DNA of 39,213 nt, taken from contig NC_068981.1 of assembly GCF_001194135.2 (NCBI RefSeq), positions 75,583,606 to 75,622,818 of the forward strand, written 5' to 3'. Made by a program: the position numbers and the translations under genes. The notes beneath the pieces were generated by a model that did not search any database, was not told the DNA's origin, and saw nothing but the letters and a program-made list of their open reading frames with translations. Of the stretch, positions 2,245 through 37,282 are shown piece after piece (the stretch's first letter is position 1; each line of letters starts with the position of its first letter). The DNA comes from Octopus bimaculoides (lineage: Eukaryota).

Positions 2245-2397
2245 GGCGCAAGCGTGGCTATGTGGTAGAACATGCTTCCCAATCACATGGTCCCGGGTTC
2301 AGTTCCACTGCGTGGCACTTTGGGCAAGTTTCTTCTACTTTTGCCAACCAAAGCCTTGTGAGTGGATTTGGTAGACGGAAACTGAAAGAAGCCCGTC

Positions 2398-2437
<40 letters not shown>

Positions 2438-2656
2438 GTGTTTGTGTCTGTGTTTGTACCCCACCATCGTTTGACAACCGATGTTGGTGTGTTTATGTCC
2501 CCGTAACTTAGCGGTTCGGCAAGAGGACGATAGTATAAGTACTAGGTTTACAAAGAATAAGTCCTGGGATCGATTTGTTCGACTAAAACCCCCTAAGTTG
2601 GTGCTGCAGCATGACCATATTCAAATGACTGACACAAATAAAAGATTAAAAGAATA
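2245..2656 (+). mobile_element. tRNA-derived CORE-like SINE with internal (TA)n (family D), near full length
   Basis: Head GGCGCAAGCGTGGCTATGTGGTAG...GGGTTCAGTTCC; CORE-like TGGCACTTTGGGCAAGTTTCTTCTAC; GACGGAAACTGAAAGAAGCCCGTCG(TA)n; A-rich end AAAAGATTAAAAGAATA. Homologous to copies at 13393, 30058 and 36757. Confidence 0.88.
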
Positions 2657-9204: not shown

Positions 9205-9509
9205 TGTGAGAATAGGGTATTCGCCTCACCATCGTAAGGTTCTGAGTTCGAAAAGCAGTGGCGCATTGTGTGCTTGAGGGAGACATTTAATTTCACTTTG
9301 CAGCAGGGAAATCAGCGGACAAAAACGAGTAGTACCTGTATTTCAAAGGGCCAGTCTTATCACATTCGATGTCACGCTGAACCTCCCTGAGAACTACGTT
9401 AAGGGCATGTTTGTGAAGTACTCAGCCACTTGCATGCTAATTTCAAGAGCAGGTTGTTCCGTTGATCGGATCAGCGGGAACTCTTGTCGTCGTAACCGAC
9501 GGAGTGCCA
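9205..9509 (+). mobile_element. tRNA-derived SINE (family B: CORE-like body + tail T1)
   Basis: Eroded head with B-box-like GAGTTCGAA, CORE-like TTGTGTGCTTGAGGGAGACATTT, and 3' region TTTCAAAGGGCCAG...GAGAACTACGTTAAGGG...GTTCCGTTGATCGGATC...GACGGAGTGCCA shared with the 77-456 element. Confidence 0.8.
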
Positions 9510-10143: not shown

Positions 10144-11100
10144 ACACACACATATATCGTTGCTATTATGTTAAATTGTCGTATGTCCAAATTGCATTTT
10201 TTTTTTGCAAGTATTGCTTGCAATAGCCAGTTCTTTTGGTCAAACTATCGTATCTTCATCTGGTTCAGATGCCAAGATATAAAAATTTGCCACAGTGTAG
10301 TACAACGGCGTTGCTATGGAATGGTGAAAAACAACGTTTTTGGACTAACGACACTTTTGCATAATAGCAACGATATATATATATATAGCTAGGTAGATTG
10401 ATAGAAATATATACAGTAAGAATGATTTCATCTATGTGTATTCTCTGTTAGGGTTATAATACTCATGCGATATTTTGATATCATCATTAATATTTGTGAT
10501 TACGACTAAGATGAGAATACCTTCAAGGAACGGTAGTATAATGTGAATATGGTGATGTCATAAATTCGGAAGTCGAAAACACTTCAAACAATTACGAGAA
10601 TTTACTGTTCTTGTAACAAATTACACATCACCTGAGGTAGTTCCTTCTCAGCCATATTGTTGATATTCATGTATATTCATAAGCATCCACACTACAATCC
10701 ATTATTACCTATATATATATACATATGTGTATGTGCGTGCGTGTGTGTGTATGGAGATGGAGAGCGAAAGAGAGAGAGAAAGAACGAGTGAGAAGTTGAT
10801 TACGCCTCGTCTAGTCAAGTAAGTGTGCAAATTGACTAATTAGGTCTAATTAGACCGAAAGATATCCATTGTATTCATCTTTTTGCTTTCAAGTCTAGAT
10901 TCACTCCTGTTTGCTTTGTCCATATTGAGCCAATATTTCGATCAACTGATCATATTTGAGTTTTCGTTCTAGATTTTAAGTATCGGCTTAAAACGAAGTT
11001 TTGTTTACTAATATTCTCAGTTGATCGTAGTTTCTCAGTACACTACCACAATATTTTCATTAATATACTTTTGGATATGTCATAAATACTTACTTAATAG

Positions 11101-11314
11101 TCTTTCCTACTCTAGGTACAAGGCCCGAAATTTTTGGGGAGGAGCCAGTCGATTAGATCGACCCCAGTACGCAACTGGTACTTAATTTATCGACCCCGAA
11201 AGAATGAAAGGCAAAGTCGACCTCGGCGGAATTTGAACTCAGAGCATAAAGACAGACGAAATACTGTTAAACATTTCGCCCAGCGTGCTAACGTTTCTGC
11301 CAGCTCTCCGCCTT
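11101..11314 (-). mobile_element. Meta-domain-like tRNA SINE (family M), best-preserved copy
   Basis: Minus strand AGGCGGAGAGCTGGCAGAAACGTTAGCACG...GAGTTCAAATTCC (B box) then GCCGAGGTCGACTTTGCCTTTCATTCTTTCGGGGTCGATAAATTAAGTACC, which resembles the MetaSINE central domain as I recall it (not database-checked). Confidence 0.85.
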
Positions 11315-12581: not shown

Positions 12582-12793
12582 GGTTTCAAATTTTGGCACA
12601 AGGCCAGCAAGTTTGAGGAGAAGGGCTGACTCGATAACATCGATGACAGTGATCAATCGGTACTTATTTTATCGATCCTGCAAGGGATGAAAGGGGGAGT
12701 CAACCTCGGCGGAATTTGAGAGCAGAACGTATGAAATCCCGCTAAGCATTTTGCCTGGCGTGCTAACGATTGTGCCAAATCGCCGCCTTAATC
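12582..12793 (-). mobile_element. Family M SINE with perfect 17-bp TSD
   Basis: GTTGGCATTAAAATATT at 12565-12581 and 12794-12810; body colinear with the 11101 copy. Confidence 0.9.
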
Positions 12794-13077: not shown

Positions 13078-13392
13078 CTGGAAAAATATTATGAGCCAGC
13101 TGTTTTCACTGACGATATCACGTAAAAGTTCATATTTAATATATTACACACACACACACACACACACAACTAAAATATAATACACCATATTAGCTAATAC
13201 TATAATATTTAGGGCCATTACATGCGTGAAAGATTGTATACAAATTCTTATACATATGATATTATCAAAAGACATAATATTCTAAAGAACGTAAATTCCA
13301 AATATTTCAGTTTTTAAGAAATGCACGTAATCAATCTTCCTAAGTACACACACTATATAAGTGACCGTAATTACCTCCCTTGTCTTTCACCC

Positions 13393-13785
13393 TTTTCTTG
13401 TTTCAGTCATTAGACTGCGGTTATGTTGGGGCACCGTCTTGAATATTTTAGTCGAAAGAATCGACCGCAGTACTTACATTTTAAGCCCGGTACTTATTCT
13501 ATCGGTCTCTTTTGCCGAACTGCCACGTGACGGGGATGTAAACACACCAACACCGGTGAAGAGAGGAACAACAACAGACACGAAAACACACACACATAAA
13601 TACATATATATACATGTATATATACGACGGGCTTCTTTCAGTTTCCGTCTAGCAAACCACTCACAAGTCTTTGGTCGGCCCGAGGCTATAGTAGAAGACA
13701 CTTCCCCAAGGTACTATGCAGTGGGACTGAACCCGGAACCATGTTGTTGAGAAGCAAGCTTCTTACTACAAAGCCACTCCTAGCC
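13393..13785 (-). mobile_element. Family D CORE-like SINE, near full length
   Basis: Reverse complement of the 2245 family: TATACGACGGGCTTCTTTCAGTTTCCGTC, CTATAGTAGAAGACACTT, GGGACTGAACCCGGAACCATG. Confidence 0.88.
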
Positions 13786-14034: not shown

Positions 14035-14331
14035 GTGGAGGCGCGTGGCTTAGTGATTAGGGTGTCAGCATCATGATTGTAAGATTGTTGTTTCGATTTC
14101 TGGACCGGGCGACGCGTTGTGTTCTTGAGCAAAACACTTNNNNNNNNNNCGGGCGACGCGTTGTGTTCTTGAGCAAAACACTTCATTCCACGTTGCTCCA
14201 GTCCACTCAGCTGGCAAAAATGAGTAACGCTGCGATGGACTAGCGTCCCGTCCACCGGGGCAACACATACGCCATTGAAACTGGTCCCATGCATCTGGTT
14301 AGGCTTTAAAAGGGCGCATTTATTAATTTTT
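14035..14331 (+). mobile_element. tRNA-derived SINE (family C: head H1 + CORE-like body + tail T2)
   Basis: GTGGAGGCGCGTGGCTTAGTG...TTTCGATTTCTGGACCGGGCG...TTGTGTTCTTGAGCAAAACACTT...GCTGCGATGGACTAGCGTCCCGTCC. 15-bp TSD TTAT(A/G)TCTGAAAGCT at 14020-14034 and 14332-14346. Confidence 0.88.
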
Positions 14332-15431: not shown

Positions 15432-15783
15432 TGGTGGTTGTCTACTCCTTAAACAGAGTTTGACCACCTCCTGCACTTACACCTTAGCCCTTTCATGGCG
15501 TCTGATGTGGCTTTTTAAACCAGACAGTGTTTTGAAAAAAACACCCACACATATTGCACCTCTGATTTGCACTACCAATACCTGCAAGTAAGTTCTGCTC
15601 ATTGTGGATCCTAACATGTCTTTTAAGACCCCCATTGGATTTGCAAACCCTCTGGCACACACCACATTCAAACGTGTGCACAGACATATAATCAGAATAG
15701 CTGGGTGAGGTTTGTTTTCCATGGGTTCGCAGGTGAGATTTGAGGCCAGCCAAGGACAGACATGGTCTGTCACAGACTGTGCA
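15432..15783 (-). mobile_element. 3' end of an RTE-like LINE encoding three C2H2 zinc fingers (5' part lost in N gap)
   Basis: CTVCDRPCLSLAGLKSHLRTH, CGVCQRVCKSNGGLKRHVRIH and CNMCGCFF/KTLSGLKSHIRRH (each C-x2-C-x12-H-x3-H; the third needs removal of one base in the A7 run at 15535-15541). Stop at 15477-15479, ~45-nt 3' UTR with stem-loop GGTGGT...ACCACC (15433-15468), then (TA)n. Confidence 0.8.
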
Positions 15784-16546
15784 NNNNNNNNNNNNNNNNN
15801 NNNNNNNNNNNNNNNNNNNNNNNNNNNNNNNNNNNNNNNNNNNNNNNNNNNNNNNNNNNNNNNNNNNNNNNNNNNNNNNNNNNNNNNNNNNNNNNNNNNN
15901 NNNNNNNNNNNNNNNNNNNNNNNNNNNNNNNNNNNNNNNNNNNNNNNNNNNNNNNNNNNNNNNNNNNNNNNNNNNNNNNNNNNNNNNNNNNNNNNNNNNN
16001 NNNNNNNNNNNNNNNNNNNNNNNNNNNNNNNNNNNNNNNNNNNNNNNNNNNNNNNNNNNNNNNNNNNNNNNNNNNNNNNNNNNNNNNNNNNNNNNNNNNN
16101 NNTATATATATATATATATATATATATTCATATGGAATATACGATTTTACATATACAAACATATGTATATATATGTATACGCATATATATATATATATAC
16201 ATGTGTGTGTGTGTGTATGTGTGTGTATGCACACACACGCATACACACAAGCACAAGCAGAAATATACTCAGTCACACCAAAGAATAAGGAGTTCAAGTT
16301 TCGACAAACGTCTCTGCAATACATCATCGAATTTATAGTGCCTATACATAATTCTTTCTATACATTATTCTCTATACTTTCACTACATTCCTATTCTCAC
16401 GCACACACATAAAAGACATAGATATAAGCCCTTTTCTATTGAGAAAGTAGCACTGGTCAACTCTGATGAGGTCTAATGGGCGTACATTCATGTATGTGCA
16501 GTGTTGTCTCTTGCCTGTAACAACACTAGGACAGTTTTTCCTTTAC

Positions 16547-22442: not shown

Positions 22443-22988
22443 CCCCCACACACACAACCCAAGCTTCTCCATATTCTATAATTATATTATAATTACATAT
22501 ATATTCTAATGCATATTTTTCAAAACCATATTTGGCAGCATTCCACAAGAAACTTTGTTCTTTCATCTATATCTTCTGGTTATGATATCTTCACTTTTTT
22601 TTATTTATTTCATTTAAAGATATATGCATTTCTCTATATCTATAATTTATTTTTCCTTTACGGATTATCTGTAATCTTGTCTTTTTCTATTTGTAATACT
22701 TCGCGTAATAACTTCCTTAAACTACTTCGCACTTCTATTCCTCCAGTCTCCTCTCATTTTGTATTCCGATTGACGTAGGTTATCAAAATCCTTGGATATG
22801 GTTTGTGCCCGTATGATGGCCTGTAAAAATAAACATGTACACTGCATTTGGTATATGCGTATGTGTGTGTGTTTATATGGGTTTTTTGGTAGGTATATGT
22901 GTATTATGTGCGTGTATATATATATATGTGTGTGTGTATACACATACATGCTTACACACACACACACACACACACGCACACACACACA

Positions 22989-23038
<50 letters not shown>

Positions 23039-23360
23039 NNNNNNNNNNNNNNNNNNNNNNNNNNNNNNNNNNNNNNNNNNNNNNNNNNNNNNNNNNNNNN
23101 NNNNNNNNNNNNNNNNNNNNNNNNNNNNNNNNNNNNNNNNNNNNNNNNNNNNNNNNNNNNNNNNNNNNNNNNNNNNNNNNNNNNNNNNNNNNNNNNNNNN
23201 NNNNNNNNNNNNNNNNNNNNNNNNNNNNNNNNNNNNNNNNNNNNNNNNNNNNNNNNNNNNNNNNNNNNNNNNNNNNNNNNNNNNNNNNNNNNNNNNNNNN
23301 NNNNNNNNNNNNNNNNNNNNNNNNNNNNNNNNNNNNNNNNNNNNNNNNNNNNNNNNNNNN

Positions 23361-23411
<51 letters not shown>

Positions 23412-23450
23412 TTATGTATGTATGTATGTATGTATGTATGTATGTATGTG
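22386..23450. repeat. (CA)n/(TG)n/(TATG)n microsatellite cluster spanning a gap
   Basis: Tracts at about 22395-22440, 22955-23038 and 23361-23450. Confidence 0.85.
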
Positions 23451-23489
23451 CATTGTTAGTGAATAATCGAAACTGTTGTGGCTCCTTAC

Positions 23490-30224: not shown

Positions 30225-30495
30225 ACACACACATACACACACGCACATATACACACGCACATACACACACGCACACGCACACACATACATACACACACGC
30301 ACACACATACATACATACATTATATGTGCATATACGAGACGTTTCTTTCAGTTTCCGTCTGCTAAACACTAACAGGGCTTTGGTCGGCCCGATGCTCTAC
30401 TAGAAGGCACTTGCCTAAGATGCCACGTAGTGTGAGTCAACCGGGAACTACGTGGTTGAGAAGCAAACATCTTACTACAAAGTCACGCCTACGCC
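30058..30495 (-). mobile_element. Family D SINE with expanded internal (CA)n-type microsatellite and internal deletion
   Basis: TTTCTTTCAGTTTCCGTC...GCTTTGGTCGGCCCGA...CTAGAAGGCACTTGCC and the 3' part CAGTCATGAGACTGCGG...GAATCGACTACAGTACTTAT. Confidence 0.8.
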
Positions 30496-30558
30496 TTCCC
30501 ATCACTGAAATAAGGATACAAAAATAAGCATGAGTTTGTTCGTAATCCATGAAGTTAA

Positions 30559-33567: not shown

Positions 33568-33605
<38 letters not shown>

Positions 33606-34189
33606 NNNNNNNNNNNNNNNNNNNNNNNNNNNNNNNNNNNNNNNNNNNNNNNNNNNNNNNNNNNNNNNNNNNNNNNNNNNNNNNNNNNNNNNNNNNNNNN
33701 NNNNNNNNNNNNNNNNNNNNNNNNNNNNNNNNNNNNNNNNNNNNNNNNNNNNNNNNNNNNNNNNNNNNNNNNNNNNNNNNNNNNNNNNNNNNNNNNNNNN
33801 NNNNNNNNNNNNNNNNNNNNNNNNNNNNNNNNNNNNNNNNNNNNNNNNNNNNNNNNNNNNNNNNNNNNNNNNNNNNNNNNNNNNNNNNNNNNNNNNNNNN
33901 NNNNNNNNNNNNNNNNNNNNNNNNNNNNNNNNNNNNNNNNNNNNNNNNNNNNNNNNNNNNNNNNNNNNNNNNNNNNNNNNNNNNNNNNNNNNNNNNNNNN
34001 NNNNNNNNNNNNNNNNNNNNNNNNNNNNNNNNNNNNNNNNNNNNNNNNNNNNNNNNNNNNNNNNNNNNNNNNNNNNNNNNNNNNNNNNNNNNNNNNNNNN
34101 NNNNNNNNNNNNNNNNNNNNNNNNNNNNNNNNNNNNNNNNNNNNNNNNNNNNNNNNNNNNNNNNNNNNNNNNNNNNNNNNNNNNNNNNN

Positions 34190-34214
<25 letters not shown>

Positions 34215-34220
<6 letters not shown>

Positions 34221-34469
34221 TAACGAGGCTCACAACGCAATTGTATACAAAATCGATATACACTCTCATATCTGATTATAAGTCCATCAACAAGAGCACA
34301 CCTAACTACACACTCATATAGATACTCACTTCAGCTAAGTCAAATAAAACACAAAACCCAAGAACTGAATTTTTGTCTTCACCACATGAGCTTTGACTTT
34401 TGTTAGCGACTTTCTTGAATTCTGTAAATAAGAAAAATATTAATCACTAAGGAAAAGTCACGTACGTGC
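34215..34469 (-). repeat. Left arm of a 255-bp inverted repeat; contains a 92-nt exon-like cassette (34330-34421)
   Basis: Reverse complement aligns end to end with 35800-36054; TTTTTCTTATTTACAG | 92 nt | GTGAGT. Confidence 0.92.
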
Positions 34470-35799
34470 TGTGATATAACAGCGGAAAAATTACGTATGT
34501 GCGGTTATATAACGGTTATATTAACTTATTTAGCATTCAACTGTGTCAACAGTTAATAATCAAATAAGTTCCAGGTCGATTTGTTTAACTGAAACCCTTG
34601 AAGACAACACTGTAGCTTGGCGGCAACTAATCGACGTAAAGTGTTTAACGAGTAAAAAATGACGTTGTTATGATGTTCATGAAAGGGAGTAGTATTTCGT
34701 GTATGTATTGGAAAAAGCTTACCGCGAATCTATTCATGTAAGCAACAAACACCTTGTGTGAGGTGTTGGGACAGAAAGAAGAGTTTGCTGCTGCATACAG
34801 AAAATGACAGTAGTGTCATTTACCAATGCAATCGCAAGTGCATGATTGGCGTTCATGCATGCCTATCATATATGTATGTTGTGCATGTATGCTTGCTTGT
34901 ATGCATGTATATATATATATATATACTTTTACAGAGTTCAGTCTCTGGACTGCCGCAAATGGGAATAAACACCACGAGATTATGGTCAATCGTATCGATA
35001 CCATTTCATATGTTAAAGTCTGGCCATTATATTATCGAAAGCTACCAATTAAACCGCTAAGTCAGTGTCATAATCAAACTGATGTAAGCATGTACACAAA
35101 TATAGACTAAGTGTGTATACCTGTATATGTCGGTGCATATATATGCGAAGTCTCTCTCTCTCTCACTCCCCCCCCCACACATATATAGCTATCAGTCAAT
35201 CTATCTATATCCATGCCTATGTGTCTGTATGCATGGATGCATATGTATTGTACATATGTGAGCGTATATGTGTGTATGTACCGTTTCCTCCTCTGTAAAT
35301 CCTGTCAAAAAACGTTGGATGACAGGAAGCTAGTTAAAGGTTAGGTGACACACAGCAGGAATGAACACGAGACTATATAGTCCTGAAGCGAACGTCATAT
35401 GAACCCAGCCTCTTCTGTCTCTTTTTCTTCCTCACAATCCTTAGACATATATATATATATATATATAAATACATATATATATATATATGATATGTATGTA
35501 TGTATGTATGTATAAATAAGAAAAAGTGGCACAACAAGGCACCGATGTTTGCTGGAAATAGTCGATAACTGTACGACGCTATGTAAAGCATCAATGAATG
35601 TATAGAGGCAAAGATGTGTGCGGGCACCGAATATAAAAAAAAAATCGTCGTACGTCTAGGAATAACGCCGGATTAATTGATAACCTAGAATGGATAACCT
35701 AGTACTCGAGTTTCGGAATTTCCAGAATAAGTTTGTTATCGTAAATCTGGTTAGTCTTCTTTTGAACTAGATTCACGAAAGACAAAATTTAGAATATCC

Positions 35800-36054
35800 G
35801 CACGTATGTAACTTTTTCTTTGAAATTAATTTTTTTCTTATTTACAGAATTCAAGGAAATCATTAACAAAAGTCAAAGCTCATGTGGTGAAGCCAAAAAT
35901 TCACTTCTTAGGTTTTGTGGTCTATTTGACTCAGCTGAAGTGAGTATCTATGTGAGTGTGTAGTTTGGCGTGTTCTTGTTGATGGACTTACAATCATATA
36001 TGAGAGTGTATATCGTTTTAGTATACAAGTGTGGTGTAAGCCTCGTTAGCATAT
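35800..36054 (+). repeat. Right arm of the 255-bp inverted repeat
   Basis: Reverse complement of the left arm; exon portions differ at 10 of 92 positions. Confidence 0.92.
35848..35939 (+). CDS. Candidate 92-nt exon, product unknown
   Basis: TTTTTTTCTTATTTACAG | ... GCTGAA | GTGAGT. Two frames open: NSRKSLTKVKAHVVKPKIHFLGFVVYLTQL and FKEIINKSQSSCGEAKNSLLRFCGLFDSAE. Confidence 0.45.
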
Positions 36055-36156
36055 GTGTGTGTGCGTGTTTTTGTAAGTGTGAATGCCAGTATATTCGGCT
36101 GATACGCCTAGCTATAAAGAAAACCAAGTTCGGTGAAGAAGTTTTATACAAAAATT

Positions 36157-36331
36157 ATAAATATTATTGCAATACAATACTATTGTTTTCCAGCTAAATA
36201 AAGCACCGTAAATGGAGAATTATAAATAAGAAATAGTGGCACAACATTGGTGCCTTGTTGTGCCAATATTTCCTATTTATAACTCTATATTTAACTGGAA
36301 AATAATACTATTGTATTGCAATAACATTTAT
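36157..36331. repeat. About 175-bp foldback palindrome
   Basis: TTATTGCAATACAATACTATTGTTTTCCAG...TGGCACAACA [9-nt loop] TGTTGTGCCA...CTGGAAAATAATACTATTGTATTGCAATAA. Confidence 0.9.
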
Positions 36332-36358
36332 TTTCTTTTATATGTATGTACATATATA

Positions 36359-36546
36359 TGTAAACACACCAACATCGGCTATCGAACGATGCTAGTGAGA
36401 AGTCAGACCCAAATACACAAATACATACATACGTACACAAACACACACACACACACATATGCACGCACACACATACAGATACACACAGACACAGACAGGC
36501 ACAGATAGACAGACAAACAGACAGACAGACACACACACACACACAC

Positions 36547-36597
<51 letters not shown>
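36359..36597 (-). mobile_element. Family D SINE middle fragment plus expanded microsatellite, runs into gap
   Basis: GTAAACACACCAACATCGG is the reverse complement of the family's CCGATGTTGGTGTGTTTA(C/T) segment. Confidence 0.55.
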
Positions 36598-36756
36598 NNN
36601 NNNNNNNNNNNNNNNNNNNNNNNNNNNNNNNNNNNNNNNNNNNNNNNNNNNNNNNNNNNNNNNNNNNNNNNNNNNNNNNNNNNNNNNNNNNNNNNNNNNN
36701 NNNNNNNNNNNNNNNNNNNNNNNNNNNNNNNNNNNNNNNNNNNNNNNNNNNNNNNN

Positions 36757-37101
36757 TCCCACTGCGTGGCACCTTGGGCAAGTGTCATCTACTATAGCCT
36801 CGGGTCGGCCAAAGCCTTGTGAGTGGATTTGGTAGACGGAAACTGAAAGAAGCCGGTCGTATATATGTATATATATATATATGTATGTGCGTGCATATGT
36901 TTGTGTGTCTGTGTTTGTCCCCCCAACATCGCTTGACAAGCCATGGTCGTGTGTTTACGTCCCCGTAACGTTGCGGTTTGGCAAAAGCGACCGATAGAAT
37001 AAGTACTAGGTTTCCAAAGAATAAGTCCTGCGGTCGATTTGCTCGACTAAAGACGGTGCTCGAGCATGGAAGCAGTCACATCACTGAAACAAGTAAAAGA
37101 G
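36757..37101 (+). mobile_element. Family D SINE, head hidden in gap
   Basis: TCCCACTGCGTGGCACCTTGGGCAAGTG...GACGGAAACTGAAAGAAGCC...AATAAGTACTAGG...CTGAAACAAGTAAAAGAG. Confidence 0.88.
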
Positions 37102-37282
37102 TATATGTGCATACATACATATATACATACACACACACACACATATATATATACACACACACACATATATTTATATGTGTATGTATGCATGTATGTATGC
37201 ATGGAACATTAATTGCGCGCATACGTTTGATGATTTCTACGTGTGTGTGTGCTCGCGCGCTCATGTGTGTGTGTATGTGTGT

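What the first reader, a model, noticed from the sequence alone, without database searches (positions are those of the whole stretch)
34215..36054. Inverted duplication of an entire exon cassette: a possible built-in dsRNA/editing-complementary sequence
Seen: two 255-bp arms 1.33 kb apart in inverted orientation, each holding acceptor + 92-nt exon + GTGAGT donor with flanking intron-like sequence. It matches none of the SINE families here and has no evident TSD. Established: long imperfect duplexes are ADAR substrates, coleoid cephalopods recode mRNA extensively by A-to-I editing, and pairing over splice sites can block exon inclusion. Inference: a transcript crossing both arms would fold the exon and both splice sites into a ~250-bp stem, so one arm could act as an editing-complementary sequence or splicing switch for the other. 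Alternatives are divergent paralogous genes or a long-TIR foldback transposon.
Basis: partly seen in the sequence, partly recalled or inferred. Interest (0 to 1): 0.8.

Follow-up and report, generated by a model that had tools for sequence, protein, structure and literature searches.

The report
Old inverted repeat with exon look-alike
Two 255-base copies of the same sequence really do face each other 1.3 kb apart and would pair into a long RNA hairpin if transcribed, but nothing shows that the exon-like piece inside them is a real exon, so this looks like an ordinary drifting inverted repeat.

Summary
The arms are 34215-34469 and 35800-36054: 255 nt, no gaps, 88.6% complementary, with a 1330-nt spacer. 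They are the only copies in the window. Each carries a pyrimidine tract, AG, a 92-nt open stretch and GTGAGT. Folding of either strand pairs 232-237 of the 255 positions.

The exon reading has no independent support. Neither candidate frame matches any protein in three large searches. Pfam and Rfam find nothing. The "exon" (89.1% identity) is no better conserved than its flanks (85.4% and 89.6%). The apparent excess of synonymous changes in frame 0 is not significant (P about 0.07 over three frames), and that frame has a TAG in the left copy. The spacer holds no transposase remnant.

The left arm begins 25 nt from an assembly gap, so the outer limit and any target-site duplication cannot be judged.

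Best reading: a neutral relic of a DNA-level inverted duplication. It could be a local duplication, a long-TIR non-autonomous element, or two neighbouring repeat copies. If transcribed, it would passively give dsRNA, a well-known class of ADAR hyper-editing substrate. A dedicated editing or splicing switch is not excluded but has a low probability (about 0.06). Genome-wide copy number and RNA-seq would be decisive, and neither was available here.

The parts
34215..34469 (-). Left arm of the inverted repeat. Its exon-like sense is on the minus strand. With two 1-nt gaps the similarity extends to 34477.
   Evidence: 255 nt, 226 matches to the reverse complement of 35800-36054, E about 6e-93
35800..36054 (+). 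Right arm of the inverted repeat. Its exon-like sense is on the plus strand. The similarity extends inward to 35794.
34470..35799 (.). Spacer (the loop if transcribed), 1330 nt. It is unique in the window apart from microsatellites and a 39-nt fragment at 35511-35549. It has no protein-family signal.
   Evidence: six-frame Pfam scan: nothing but a noise hit at E 0.12
35848..35939 (+). 92-nt exon-like segment in the right arm. It is open in frame 0 (NSRKSLTKVKAHVVKPKIHFLGFVVYLTQL) and in frame 2 (FKEIINKSQSSCGEAKNSLLRFCGLFDSAE).
   Evidence: No homologue.
34330..34421 (-). 92-nt exon-like segment in the left arm. It has 10 differences from the right copy. Frame 0 carries a TAG (34335-34337); frame 2 is open.
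35826..35847 (+). Acceptor-like pyrimidine tract plus AG in the right arm. The mirror copy is at 34422-34443 on the minus strand.
   Evidence: There is no mismatch between the arms over 35832-35855.
35940..35945 (+). Donor-like GTGAGT in the right arm. The mirror copy is at 34324-34329 on the minus strand. A second GTGAGT at 35952-35957 exists only in the right arm.
34190..34218 (.). (TA)14 tract between the assembly gap (33606-34189) and the left arm. It hides the outer boundary of the repeat.
36055..36072 (.). (TG)5-like tract directly outside the right arm. It mirrors the (CA)n that lies left of the gap at 33570-33605.
34451..34513 (.). Tandem duplication of about 30 nt at the inner edge of the left arm (34451-34480 and 34484-34513, 25/30 identical). 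It is absent from the right arm.

Best explanation
This is a genuine, old inverted repeat in repeat-rich, apparently non-coding DNA. It arose by duplication at the DNA level and now drifts neutrally. The arms differ at 11.4% of sites, which is about 0.12 substitutions per site.

The exon-like cassette is a chance or dead look-alike that was copied along with its surroundings. It is not a working exon pair.

The origin cannot be settled from this window. My split is:
- about 0.35: a one-off local inverted duplication. The one well-defined (inner) junction lies at the self-complementary ATAT, which would suit a strand-switch.
- about 0.30: the two long terminal inverted repeats of one decayed non-autonomous cut-and-paste element, with core 34219-36050 (1.83 kb), sitting in a TA-rich microsatellite.
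- about 0.15: two neighbouring copies of a mid-copy interspersed repeat.

Shown: the repeat itself, its uniform divergence, the lack of any coding or transposase signal, and the predicted hairpin.

Inferred: its only molecular consequence is passive. Any RNA that reads through both arms folds into an imperfect duplex of about 255 bp, with perfect runs up to 33 bp. ADAR would hyper-edit such a duplex, or Dicer would cut it, as happens with thousands of other neighbouring inverted repeats.

The confidence of 0.8 is for 'neutral relic without a dedicated function', whatever its origin.
For: - Repeat real and unique in the window.
- Uniform divergence: identity is 85.4% (5' flank), 89.1% ('exon') and 89.6% (3' flank), with 17 transitions and 12 transversions. 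The exon has 10 differences, against about 3 expected if frame 0 were constrained at the apparent dN/dS of 0.12 (my arithmetic).
- No protein resembles either frame or any spacer ORF in 5.8 billion clusters or in 1.84 billion representatives read exhaustively.
- No Pfam hit, no Rfam hit and no tRNA-like head.
- The frame-0 synonymous excess is not significant: P = 0.038 for that frame and 0.070 over three frames in a simulation. That frame also has a stop codon in the left copy.
- Strong acceptor + ORF + GTRAGT cassettes also occur by chance. There are two others in this window.
- Hairpin prediction.
- Literature: in octopus and other animals most hyper-editing sits in non-coding neighbouring inverted repeats, and such dsRNA-forming loci are unusually common in octopus, at 4.4e-3 of loci (PMC5625713).
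- The same 3 kb holds other foldback structures: a 175-nt palindrome and a head-to-head SINE pair across the next gap.
Against: - Exon-like cassettes meeting my strict criteria are not common. There are five in the window, and three of them lie in the arms.
- Six of the ten exon differences are synonymous in frame 0, and four of them fall at consecutive codons. That is what a coding exon under selection would look like.
- Both splice-like motifs are intact in both copies.
- My control search showed that the protein database holds no translations of this genome's own repeats. I could not verify that it holds the annotated proteome of the source organism, so the negative protein result is weaker than its size suggests.
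- A non-coding (UTR or lncRNA) exon would escape all the protein tests.
- No RNA data were available.
Confidence: 0.8

Rival explanations
1. One arm holds a real exon, possibly unannotated, lineage-specific or non-coding. The other arm is an intronic inverted copy in the same pre-mRNA. Pairing buries the exon and both splice sites in a 255-bp duplex, which acts as an exon-sized editing-complementary sequence or as a splicing switch that editing can tune.
For: The stem is predicted with either strand. Both splice-like motifs are intact in both arms. The cassette is rarer than a random motif pair. Frame 0 has a weak excess of synonymous changes.
Against: There is no protein homologue for either frame. 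The exon is no better conserved than its flanks, and mismatches are spread evenly, so nothing suggests selection on the duplex or on the coding sequence. The synonymous excess is not significant. A 255-bp stem over a needed exon would be expected to block its inclusion, so such a duplication would normally be harmful (inference). Known editing-complementary sequences are short imperfect partners, not copies of a whole exon with both splice sites (own knowledge).
Confidence: 0.06
2. A hairpin-RNA (endo-siRNA) locus. Both arms are copies of a fragment (exon plus intron edges) of a gene that lies elsewhere. The transcribed hairpin is diced into siRNAs that silence that gene, as in Drosophila hpRNA loci.
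For: [quoted passage not shown] The predicted duplex is long, with perfect runs of up to 33 bp.
Against: No parent gene could be found: there is no protein with this peptide. The 1.33-kb loop and 11% mismatch are poor for dicing. The arms include intron-like flanks, so they were not made from an mRNA. Nothing is known here about transcription or small RNAs.
Confidence: 0.04
3. Two paralogous genes lying head to head. Each uses its own copy of the exon, and they share the 1.33-kb spacer as a bidirectional promoter region.
For: The two cassettes point away from each other, and frame 2 is open in both.
Against: The segment starts with an acceptor, so each gene would need an upstream exon inside the spacer, yet the spacer has no internal mirror symmetry and no coding signal. 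The similarity stops sharply 48 nt upstream and 115 nt downstream of the exon, which is far too short for a gene duplication. In frame 2, nine of the ten changes alter the amino acid (dN/dS 2.3). There is no protein match.
Confidence: 0.03
4. An assembly artefact. The 2.4-kb contig (34190-36597) is a chimera that joins two diverged repeat copies which are not neighbours in the real chromosome.
For: The contig is short and bounded by gaps on both sides, and the left arm starts 25 nt from the contig end. The scaffold shows other assembly flaws, such as an unmerged 26-nt overlap around the 10-N gap at 14140-14149. The arms share perfect runs of up to 29 nt at the DNA level, which could confuse a short-k graph.
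Against: Artefactual foldbacks are normally identical copies, whereas these arms differ at 29 sites. Each arm is joined to unique spacer sequence within one contig.
Confidence: 0.04

Closest known systems
Neighbouring inverted copies of non-coding repeats that form long dsRNA and are hyper-edited by ADAR (inverted Alu pairs in primates; repeat pairs in Octopus bimaculoides; PMC5625713)
   Same: Two reverse-complementary segments lie within a few kb of each other. The predicted duplex is long and nearly perfect. There is no coding signal. The region is rich in repeats.
   Different: The arms belong to no repeat family visible in this window. Transcription and editing were not tested.
Editing-site complementary sequences of recoding sites (for example the intronic partner of the GluA2 Q/R exon; own knowledge)
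   Same: A complementary partner lies about 1 kb from an exon-like segment, presumably in the same primary transcript.
   Different: Known examples are short imperfect partners kept by selection. Here the partner is a full copy of the segment with both splice-like sites, it is no better conserved than its flanks, and the exon itself is unproven.
Drosophila hairpin-RNA loci made of inverted gene fragments (for example Dsim-hp58; PMC10317233, PMC10292708)
   Same: Inverted duplication of an exon-sized fragment that could give a hairpin transcript.
   Different: No target gene is known. The loop is long (1.33 kb) and the arms are 11% mismatched. There are no small-RNA data.
Tc1-like DNA transposons with long terminal inverted repeats: Minos (about 1775 bp, 255-bp repeats, TA preference; PMC10992017) and ZB/Sleeping Beauty (1597 bp, 201-bp repeats, TA duplication; PMC7913693)
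   Same: The overall geometry matches: a 1.83-kb core, arms of about 251-255 bp, and TA/AT on both sides.
   Different: There is no transposase remnant, although the arms are only about 6% from their common ancestor. No CAGT-type terminus is present and there are no convincing paired binding-site repeats inside the arms. The TA flanks carry no information. Copy number is unknown.
RNA stems that hide splice sites, and inverted intronic repeats that drive exon skipping or back-splicing (own knowledge)
   Same: If the segment is an exon, the stem would cover both its splice sites.
   Different: In known cases the repeats flank the exon or a short stem covers one site. Here the exon itself would be one strand of the stem. 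There is no splicing evidence.

Membership tests
Neighbouring inverted-repeat dsRNA (ADAR hyper-editing substrate class) | Two reverse-complementary segments within a few kb | tested here: met
   255-nt arms, 88.6% complementary, 1330 nt apart
Neighbouring inverted-repeat dsRNA (ADAR hyper-editing substrate class) | Long, nearly perfect duplex in the folded transcript | tested here: met
   Duplex energy -338 / -348 kcal/mol. The MFE fold pairs 232-237 of the 255 positions. Perfect runs reach 33 bp.
Neighbouring inverted-repeat dsRNA (ADAR hyper-editing substrate class) | Both arms present in one transcript, with clustered A-to-G RNA/DNA mismatches | not testable with these tools
   No RNA-seq and no source genome were available
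Editing-site complementary sequence of a recoding site | The partner is a genuine coding exon | tested here: inconclusive
   The motifs and open frames are present, but there is no homologue in any protein search and no significant codon signal
Editing-site complementary sequence of a recoding site | The duplex is conserved beyond its neutral surroundings | tested here: not met
   Identity is 89.1% in the segment against 85.4% and 89.6% in the flanks. The 29 mismatches are evenly spread.
Tc1/mariner-type long-TIR DNA transposon | Terminal inverted repeats of about 200-250 bp around a body of 1-1.5 kb | tested here: met
   Geometry as in Minos and ZB.
Tc1/mariner-type long-TIR DNA transposon | TA target-site duplication at clean termini | tested here: inconclusive
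   ATAT lies on both sides, but the left flank is a (TA)14 tract that ends in an assembly gap
Tc1/mariner-type long-TIR DNA transposon | DDE transposase gene or its remnant between the repeats (autonomous members) | tested here: not met
   The six-frame Pfam scan is empty and the spacer ORFs have no homologue. Only a non-autonomous derivative remains possible.
Tc1/mariner-type long-TIR DNA transposon | Many dispersed copies with the same ends | not testable with these tools
   There are only two copies in the 39-kb window. The source genome was not available. Metagenome and viral scans were empty or gave chance hits.
SINE pair | tRNA-, 5S- or 7SL-like head with polymerase III boxes, and many copies | tested here: not met
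   No tRNA-like structure and no Rfam hit. Runs of T occur on both strands of the arm. The arm is unrelated to the three SINE-like families of the window.
Hairpin-RNA (endo-siRNA) locus | Arms homologous to a target gene elsewhere, and Dicer-dependent small RNAs | not testable with these tools
   No parent protein was found. No genome or small-RNA data.

The most novel reading that the evidence does not exclude
The right-arm cassette (35848-35939) is a real but unannotated exon, and the left arm is its inverted copy in the upstream intron. In the pre-mRNA the exon and both splice sites would then be locked into a 255-bp duplex, and ADAR editing of that duplex would set how often the exon is released and included. 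That would be a built-in, exon-sized editing-complementary sequence working as a splicing rheostat.
Probability: 0.05. Interest if true: 0.65.

Novelty: new member of a known kind. Interest (0 to 1): 0.2.

Why it matters
As it stands, this is one more nearby inverted repeat in a repeat-rich genome. It is a likely passive source of double-stranded RNA if the region is transcribed, and that class is already known to absorb most ADAR activity in animals, octopus included.

Its practical value is twofold. It is a caution for annotation: splice-like cassettes inside inverted repeats should not be called exons without RNA evidence. It is also a cheap candidate to check in existing RNA-seq data.

The finding would tell us something new about how editing and splicing can be coupled only if junction reads and site-specific editing were found.

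Tried and rejected
- **Protein homology of the cassette.** I searched both frames and both copies, all spacer and arm ORFs, and ran an exhaustive scan of 1.84 billion representatives. There were no hits at all.
- **Control query** with SINE-derived ORFs, a zinc-finger ORF and other long ORFs. Only the zinc-finger part hit, matching three LINE-like proteins, of which the one I traced came from an ocean metagenome. This shows the database does not hold translations of this genome's repeats, so the negatives say nothing about copy number. It also gave no clue to the organism.
- **Profile and structure scans.** Pfam on the peptides and on six-frame translations, Rfam on the whole window and ARAGORN all found nothing.
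- **A reverse-transcriptase reading** of the frame-0 peptide (the '...FLGF...' motif). I rejected it: there is no Pfam or protein hit, and no upstream reverse-transcriptase motifs.
- **Exact-DNA scans.** A 27-mer against JGI metagenomes and a 24-mer against viral contigs gave zero hits. An 18-mer gave seven chance hits in GC-rich contigs with no extended similarity.
- **Extension of the repeat across the left gap.** Only microsatellite similarity was found.
- **Paired internal binding-site repeats**, as in Sleeping-Beauty-type ends. Only a 13-nt direct repeat 48 nt apart was found.
- **dN/dS.** The uncorrected frame-0 result (0.12, P = 0.004) did not survive a simulation with the observed transition bias and three frames (P = 0.07). 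It also conflicts with the lack of overall conservation.
- **Organism.** I could not confirm that the window comes from a cephalopod. It fits the AT-rich, microsatellite-rich and SINE-rich sequence, but nothing tested it.

Full report
**Observation**

The repeat finder reports arms at 34215-34469 and 35800-36054: 255 nt, 89% complementary, 1330 nt apart. A local alignment shows 226 matches and 29 mismatches with no gap over the 255 nt. With two single-base gaps, a further 8 nt align at the inner ends, reaching 34477 and 35794. blastn gives E about 6e-93 and no further copy in the window, even with a 7-nt word. In a self-comparison of the whole window this is the most similar and the closest pair. 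The three SINE-like families present have three to four, two and three copies, at 70-80% identity.

On the plus strand there is a pyrimidine tract ending in AG at 35846-35847, then a 92-nt segment at 35848-35939, then GTGAGT at 35940-35945. The mirror image lies on the minus strand: segment 34421-34330, GTGAGT as ACTCAC at 34324-34329.

**Setting**

The window is a short-read-style scaffold with 35% G+C and nine runs of N. Five of those runs are bordered by dinucleotide microsatellites, and there are 95 dinucleotide tracts in 36.3 kb.

The repeat lies in a 2408-nt contig (34190-36597) between two gaps. The left arm starts only 25 nt from the contig end, after a (TA)14 tract. The right arm is followed by (TG)5. 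A (CA)18 tract sits on the far side of the left gap.

Two consequences follow:
- The outer limit of the repeat cannot be fixed. The mirror partner of 36055-36597 would fall inside the gap, and beyond the gap only microsatellite similarity is seen.
- The ATAT found on both sides of the core GCTAACGAGG...CCTCGTTAGC (34219-36050) cannot be read as a target-site duplication.

The 29 differences between the arms argue against a simple foldback artefact, which would give identical copies.

**Is the 92-nt segment an exon?**

Points in favour:
- Under strict criteria (at least 11 of 15 pyrimidines, YAG, an open frame of 50-250 nt, GTRAGT), the window holds only five such cassettes on both strands. Three of them lie in the arms, so there are two chance examples in about 72 kb of strand.
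- In frame 0, six of the ten differences between the copies are synonymous, four of them at consecutive codons. This gives dN/dS 0.12 and an uncorrected P of 0.004.

Points against:
- Frame 0 has a TAG in the left copy (34335-34337).
- A simulation that places ten substitutions with the observed transition bias gives six or more synonymous changes in frame 0 in 3.8% of trials, and in any of the three frames in 7.0% of trials.
- The segment is no better conserved (89.1%) than its 5' flank (85.4%) or 3' flank (89.6%). With real constraint at dN/dS 0.12, and the flank divergence taken as the neutral rate, about three differences would be expected. Ten are seen.
- The mismatch-free runs over the acceptor (24 nt) and the donor (19 nt) are matched by runs elsewhere in the arms (29, 18 and 17 nt; positions).
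- In frame 2, the only frame open in both copies, nine of the ten changes alter the amino acid (dN/dS 2.3).
- Neither frame of either copy resembles any protein. There were no hits at E up to 10 among 5.8 billion clusters, none for all arm and spacer ORFs, and none in an exhaustive HMMER scan of 1.84 billion representatives.
- Pfam and Rfam are empty.

One caveat applies. A control query built from this window's SINE-derived ORFs returned nothing. The database therefore does not hold translations of this genome's repeats, and I could not verify that it holds the annotated proteome of the source organism. A non-coding exon would also escape all these tests.

My estimate that the segment is a used exon is about 5-10%. 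This rests on a rough base-rate argument, comparing real exons per 255-nt window with chance cassettes, lowered by the negative protein searches (inference).

**Origin**

Three DNA-level routes fit the data.

(a) A one-off local inverted duplication. The only well-defined junction, the inner one, falls at ATAT. This sequence is its own reverse complement and would serve as microhomology for a strand switch (inference). A segment that included a compound (CA)n(TA)n tract would explain why both outer ends abut related microsatellites.

(b) One non-autonomous cut-and-paste element with long terminal inverted repeats.
- For: the geometry (a 1.83-kb core, arms of about 251-255 bp, TA-rich flanks) is that of Minos (about 1775 bp with 255-bp repeats; PMC10992017) and of ZB/Sleeping Beauty (1597 bp with 201-bp repeats and a TA duplication; PMC7913693).
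- Against an autonomous element: the arms are only about 6% from their common ancestor, yet six-frame Pfam scanning of 34190-36100 finds no transposase.
- Also against: no canonical terminus or paired internal binding-site repeats were seen.

(c) Two neighbouring copies of a mid-copy repeat. The literature says this is the commonest source of such structures (PMC5625713).
- Against: no other copy lies in the window. The arms have no polymerase III head and carry T-runs on both strands. They are also more alike than any other repeat pair here.

I put these at roughly 0.35, 0.30 and 0.15. Genome-wide copy number would settle it, and it could not be obtained. Exact-match scans of metagenome and viral collections were empty or gave only chance hits.

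**What it would do**

If one RNA covers both arms, they pair.
- Duplex energy is -338 kcal/mol for the plus-strand transcript (226 Watson-Crick pairs, 7 G-U, 22 mismatches, longest perfect run 33 bp).
- Duplex energy is -348 kcal/mol for the minus-strand transcript (226 Watson-Crick pairs, 10 G-U, 19 mismatches).
- The minimum-free-energy fold of 34190-36100 contains 232 arm-to-arm pairs on the plus strand and 237 on the minus strand. Its energy is -709 kcal/mol, against about -493 when the right arm is shuffled.

Such a duplex is the standard substrate for ADAR hyper-editing. In octopus, as in other animals, the great majority of editing lies in non-coding neighbouring inverted repeats, and loci able to form long dsRNA are unusually frequent, at 4.4e-3 of loci (PMC5625713).

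Nothing in the sequence suggests that the duplex is maintained by selection, so I read this effect as passive.

**Comparison with known systems**

It works like, and probably is, a member of the class of neighbouring inverted repeats that yield dsRNA.

It resembles an editing-complementary sequence only in having a complementary partner. The defining conservation of the duplex was tested and not met, and the exon is unproven.

It resembles Drosophila hairpin-RNA loci built from inverted exon fragments, for example Dsim-hp58 (PMC10317233). However, it has a long loop and 11% mismatch, and no target gene is known.

It shares its geometry with long-TIR Tc1-like transposons, but lacks a transposase remnant, and its ends cannot be judged.

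**Verdict**

The repeat is real. The 'exon cassette' label and the proposed editing or splicing function are unsupported, though not excluded (about 0.05-0.06). This is most likely an ordinary, neutrally drifting inverted repeat, and interest is low.

The same 3 kb contains two further foldback structures: a 175-nt palindrome and a head-to-head SINE pair across the next gap. This underlines how common such structures are here.

I could not test it.

Noticed in passing
window 36157-36331 (and 35511-35549): A near-palindrome of about 175-190 nt that folds into a single long hairpin (-73.3 kcal/mol, z-score -11 against shuffles), like a miniature inverted-repeat element. A 39-nt piece of it (90% identical) recurs inside the spacer of the inverted repeat.
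   Followed up: partly
window 36361-36597 and 36757-37103: An antisense fragment of SINE family A followed by (CA)n(TA)n runs into the gap at 36598-36756. A sense copy of the same SINE emerges from the other side with its head cut off. The gap therefore probably hides the junction of a head-to-head inverted SINE pair.
   Followed up: partly
window 2254-2653, 13383-13777, 30279-30497, 36757-37103: SINE family A is about 400 nt long. It has a tRNA-like head (B-box-like GGTTCCGGGTTCAGTCC), an internal (TA)n(TG)n compound microsatellite and a 3' part. Copies are 70-80% alike. Two further families lie at 83-263 / 9329-9509 and at 2746-2932 / 11095-11276 / 12595-12789.
   Followed up: partly
window 34451-34513: Tandem duplication of about 30 nt (25/30 identical) at the inner edge of the left arm only. 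It therefore probably arose after the inverted repeat formed.
   Followed up: yes
window 14140-14149: A 10-N gap flanked on both sides by the same 26 nt (CGACGCGTTGTGTTCTTGAGCAAAAC). This looks like an overlap the assembler failed to merge, so it is an assembly artefact.
   Followed up: no
window 15493-15773 (minus strand): An open frame with two C2H2 zinc fingers, cut by the gap at 15784. It is 43-48% identical to three proteins that carry reverse-transcriptase domains, one of them also an endonuclease domain; the one I traced comes from an ocean metagenome. It is most likely the N-terminal part of a LINE.
   Followed up: partly
window 15488-15587 (+) and 35992-36111 (-): The only two other segments in the window that meet the same strict exon-like criteria (pyrimidine tract, YAG, open frame, GTRAGT). 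The second overlaps the outer part of the right arm on the opposite strand.
   Followed up: no
window 22948-23453: (CA)n on the left of gap 23039-23360 and (TG)n on the right, a mirrored microsatellite pair around a gap. The (CA)n ... (TA)n / (TA)2(TG)5 tracts that flank the inverted repeat show a similar pattern. Mirrored compound microsatellites may be a recurrent feature here, or a cause of assembly breaks.
   Followed up: no
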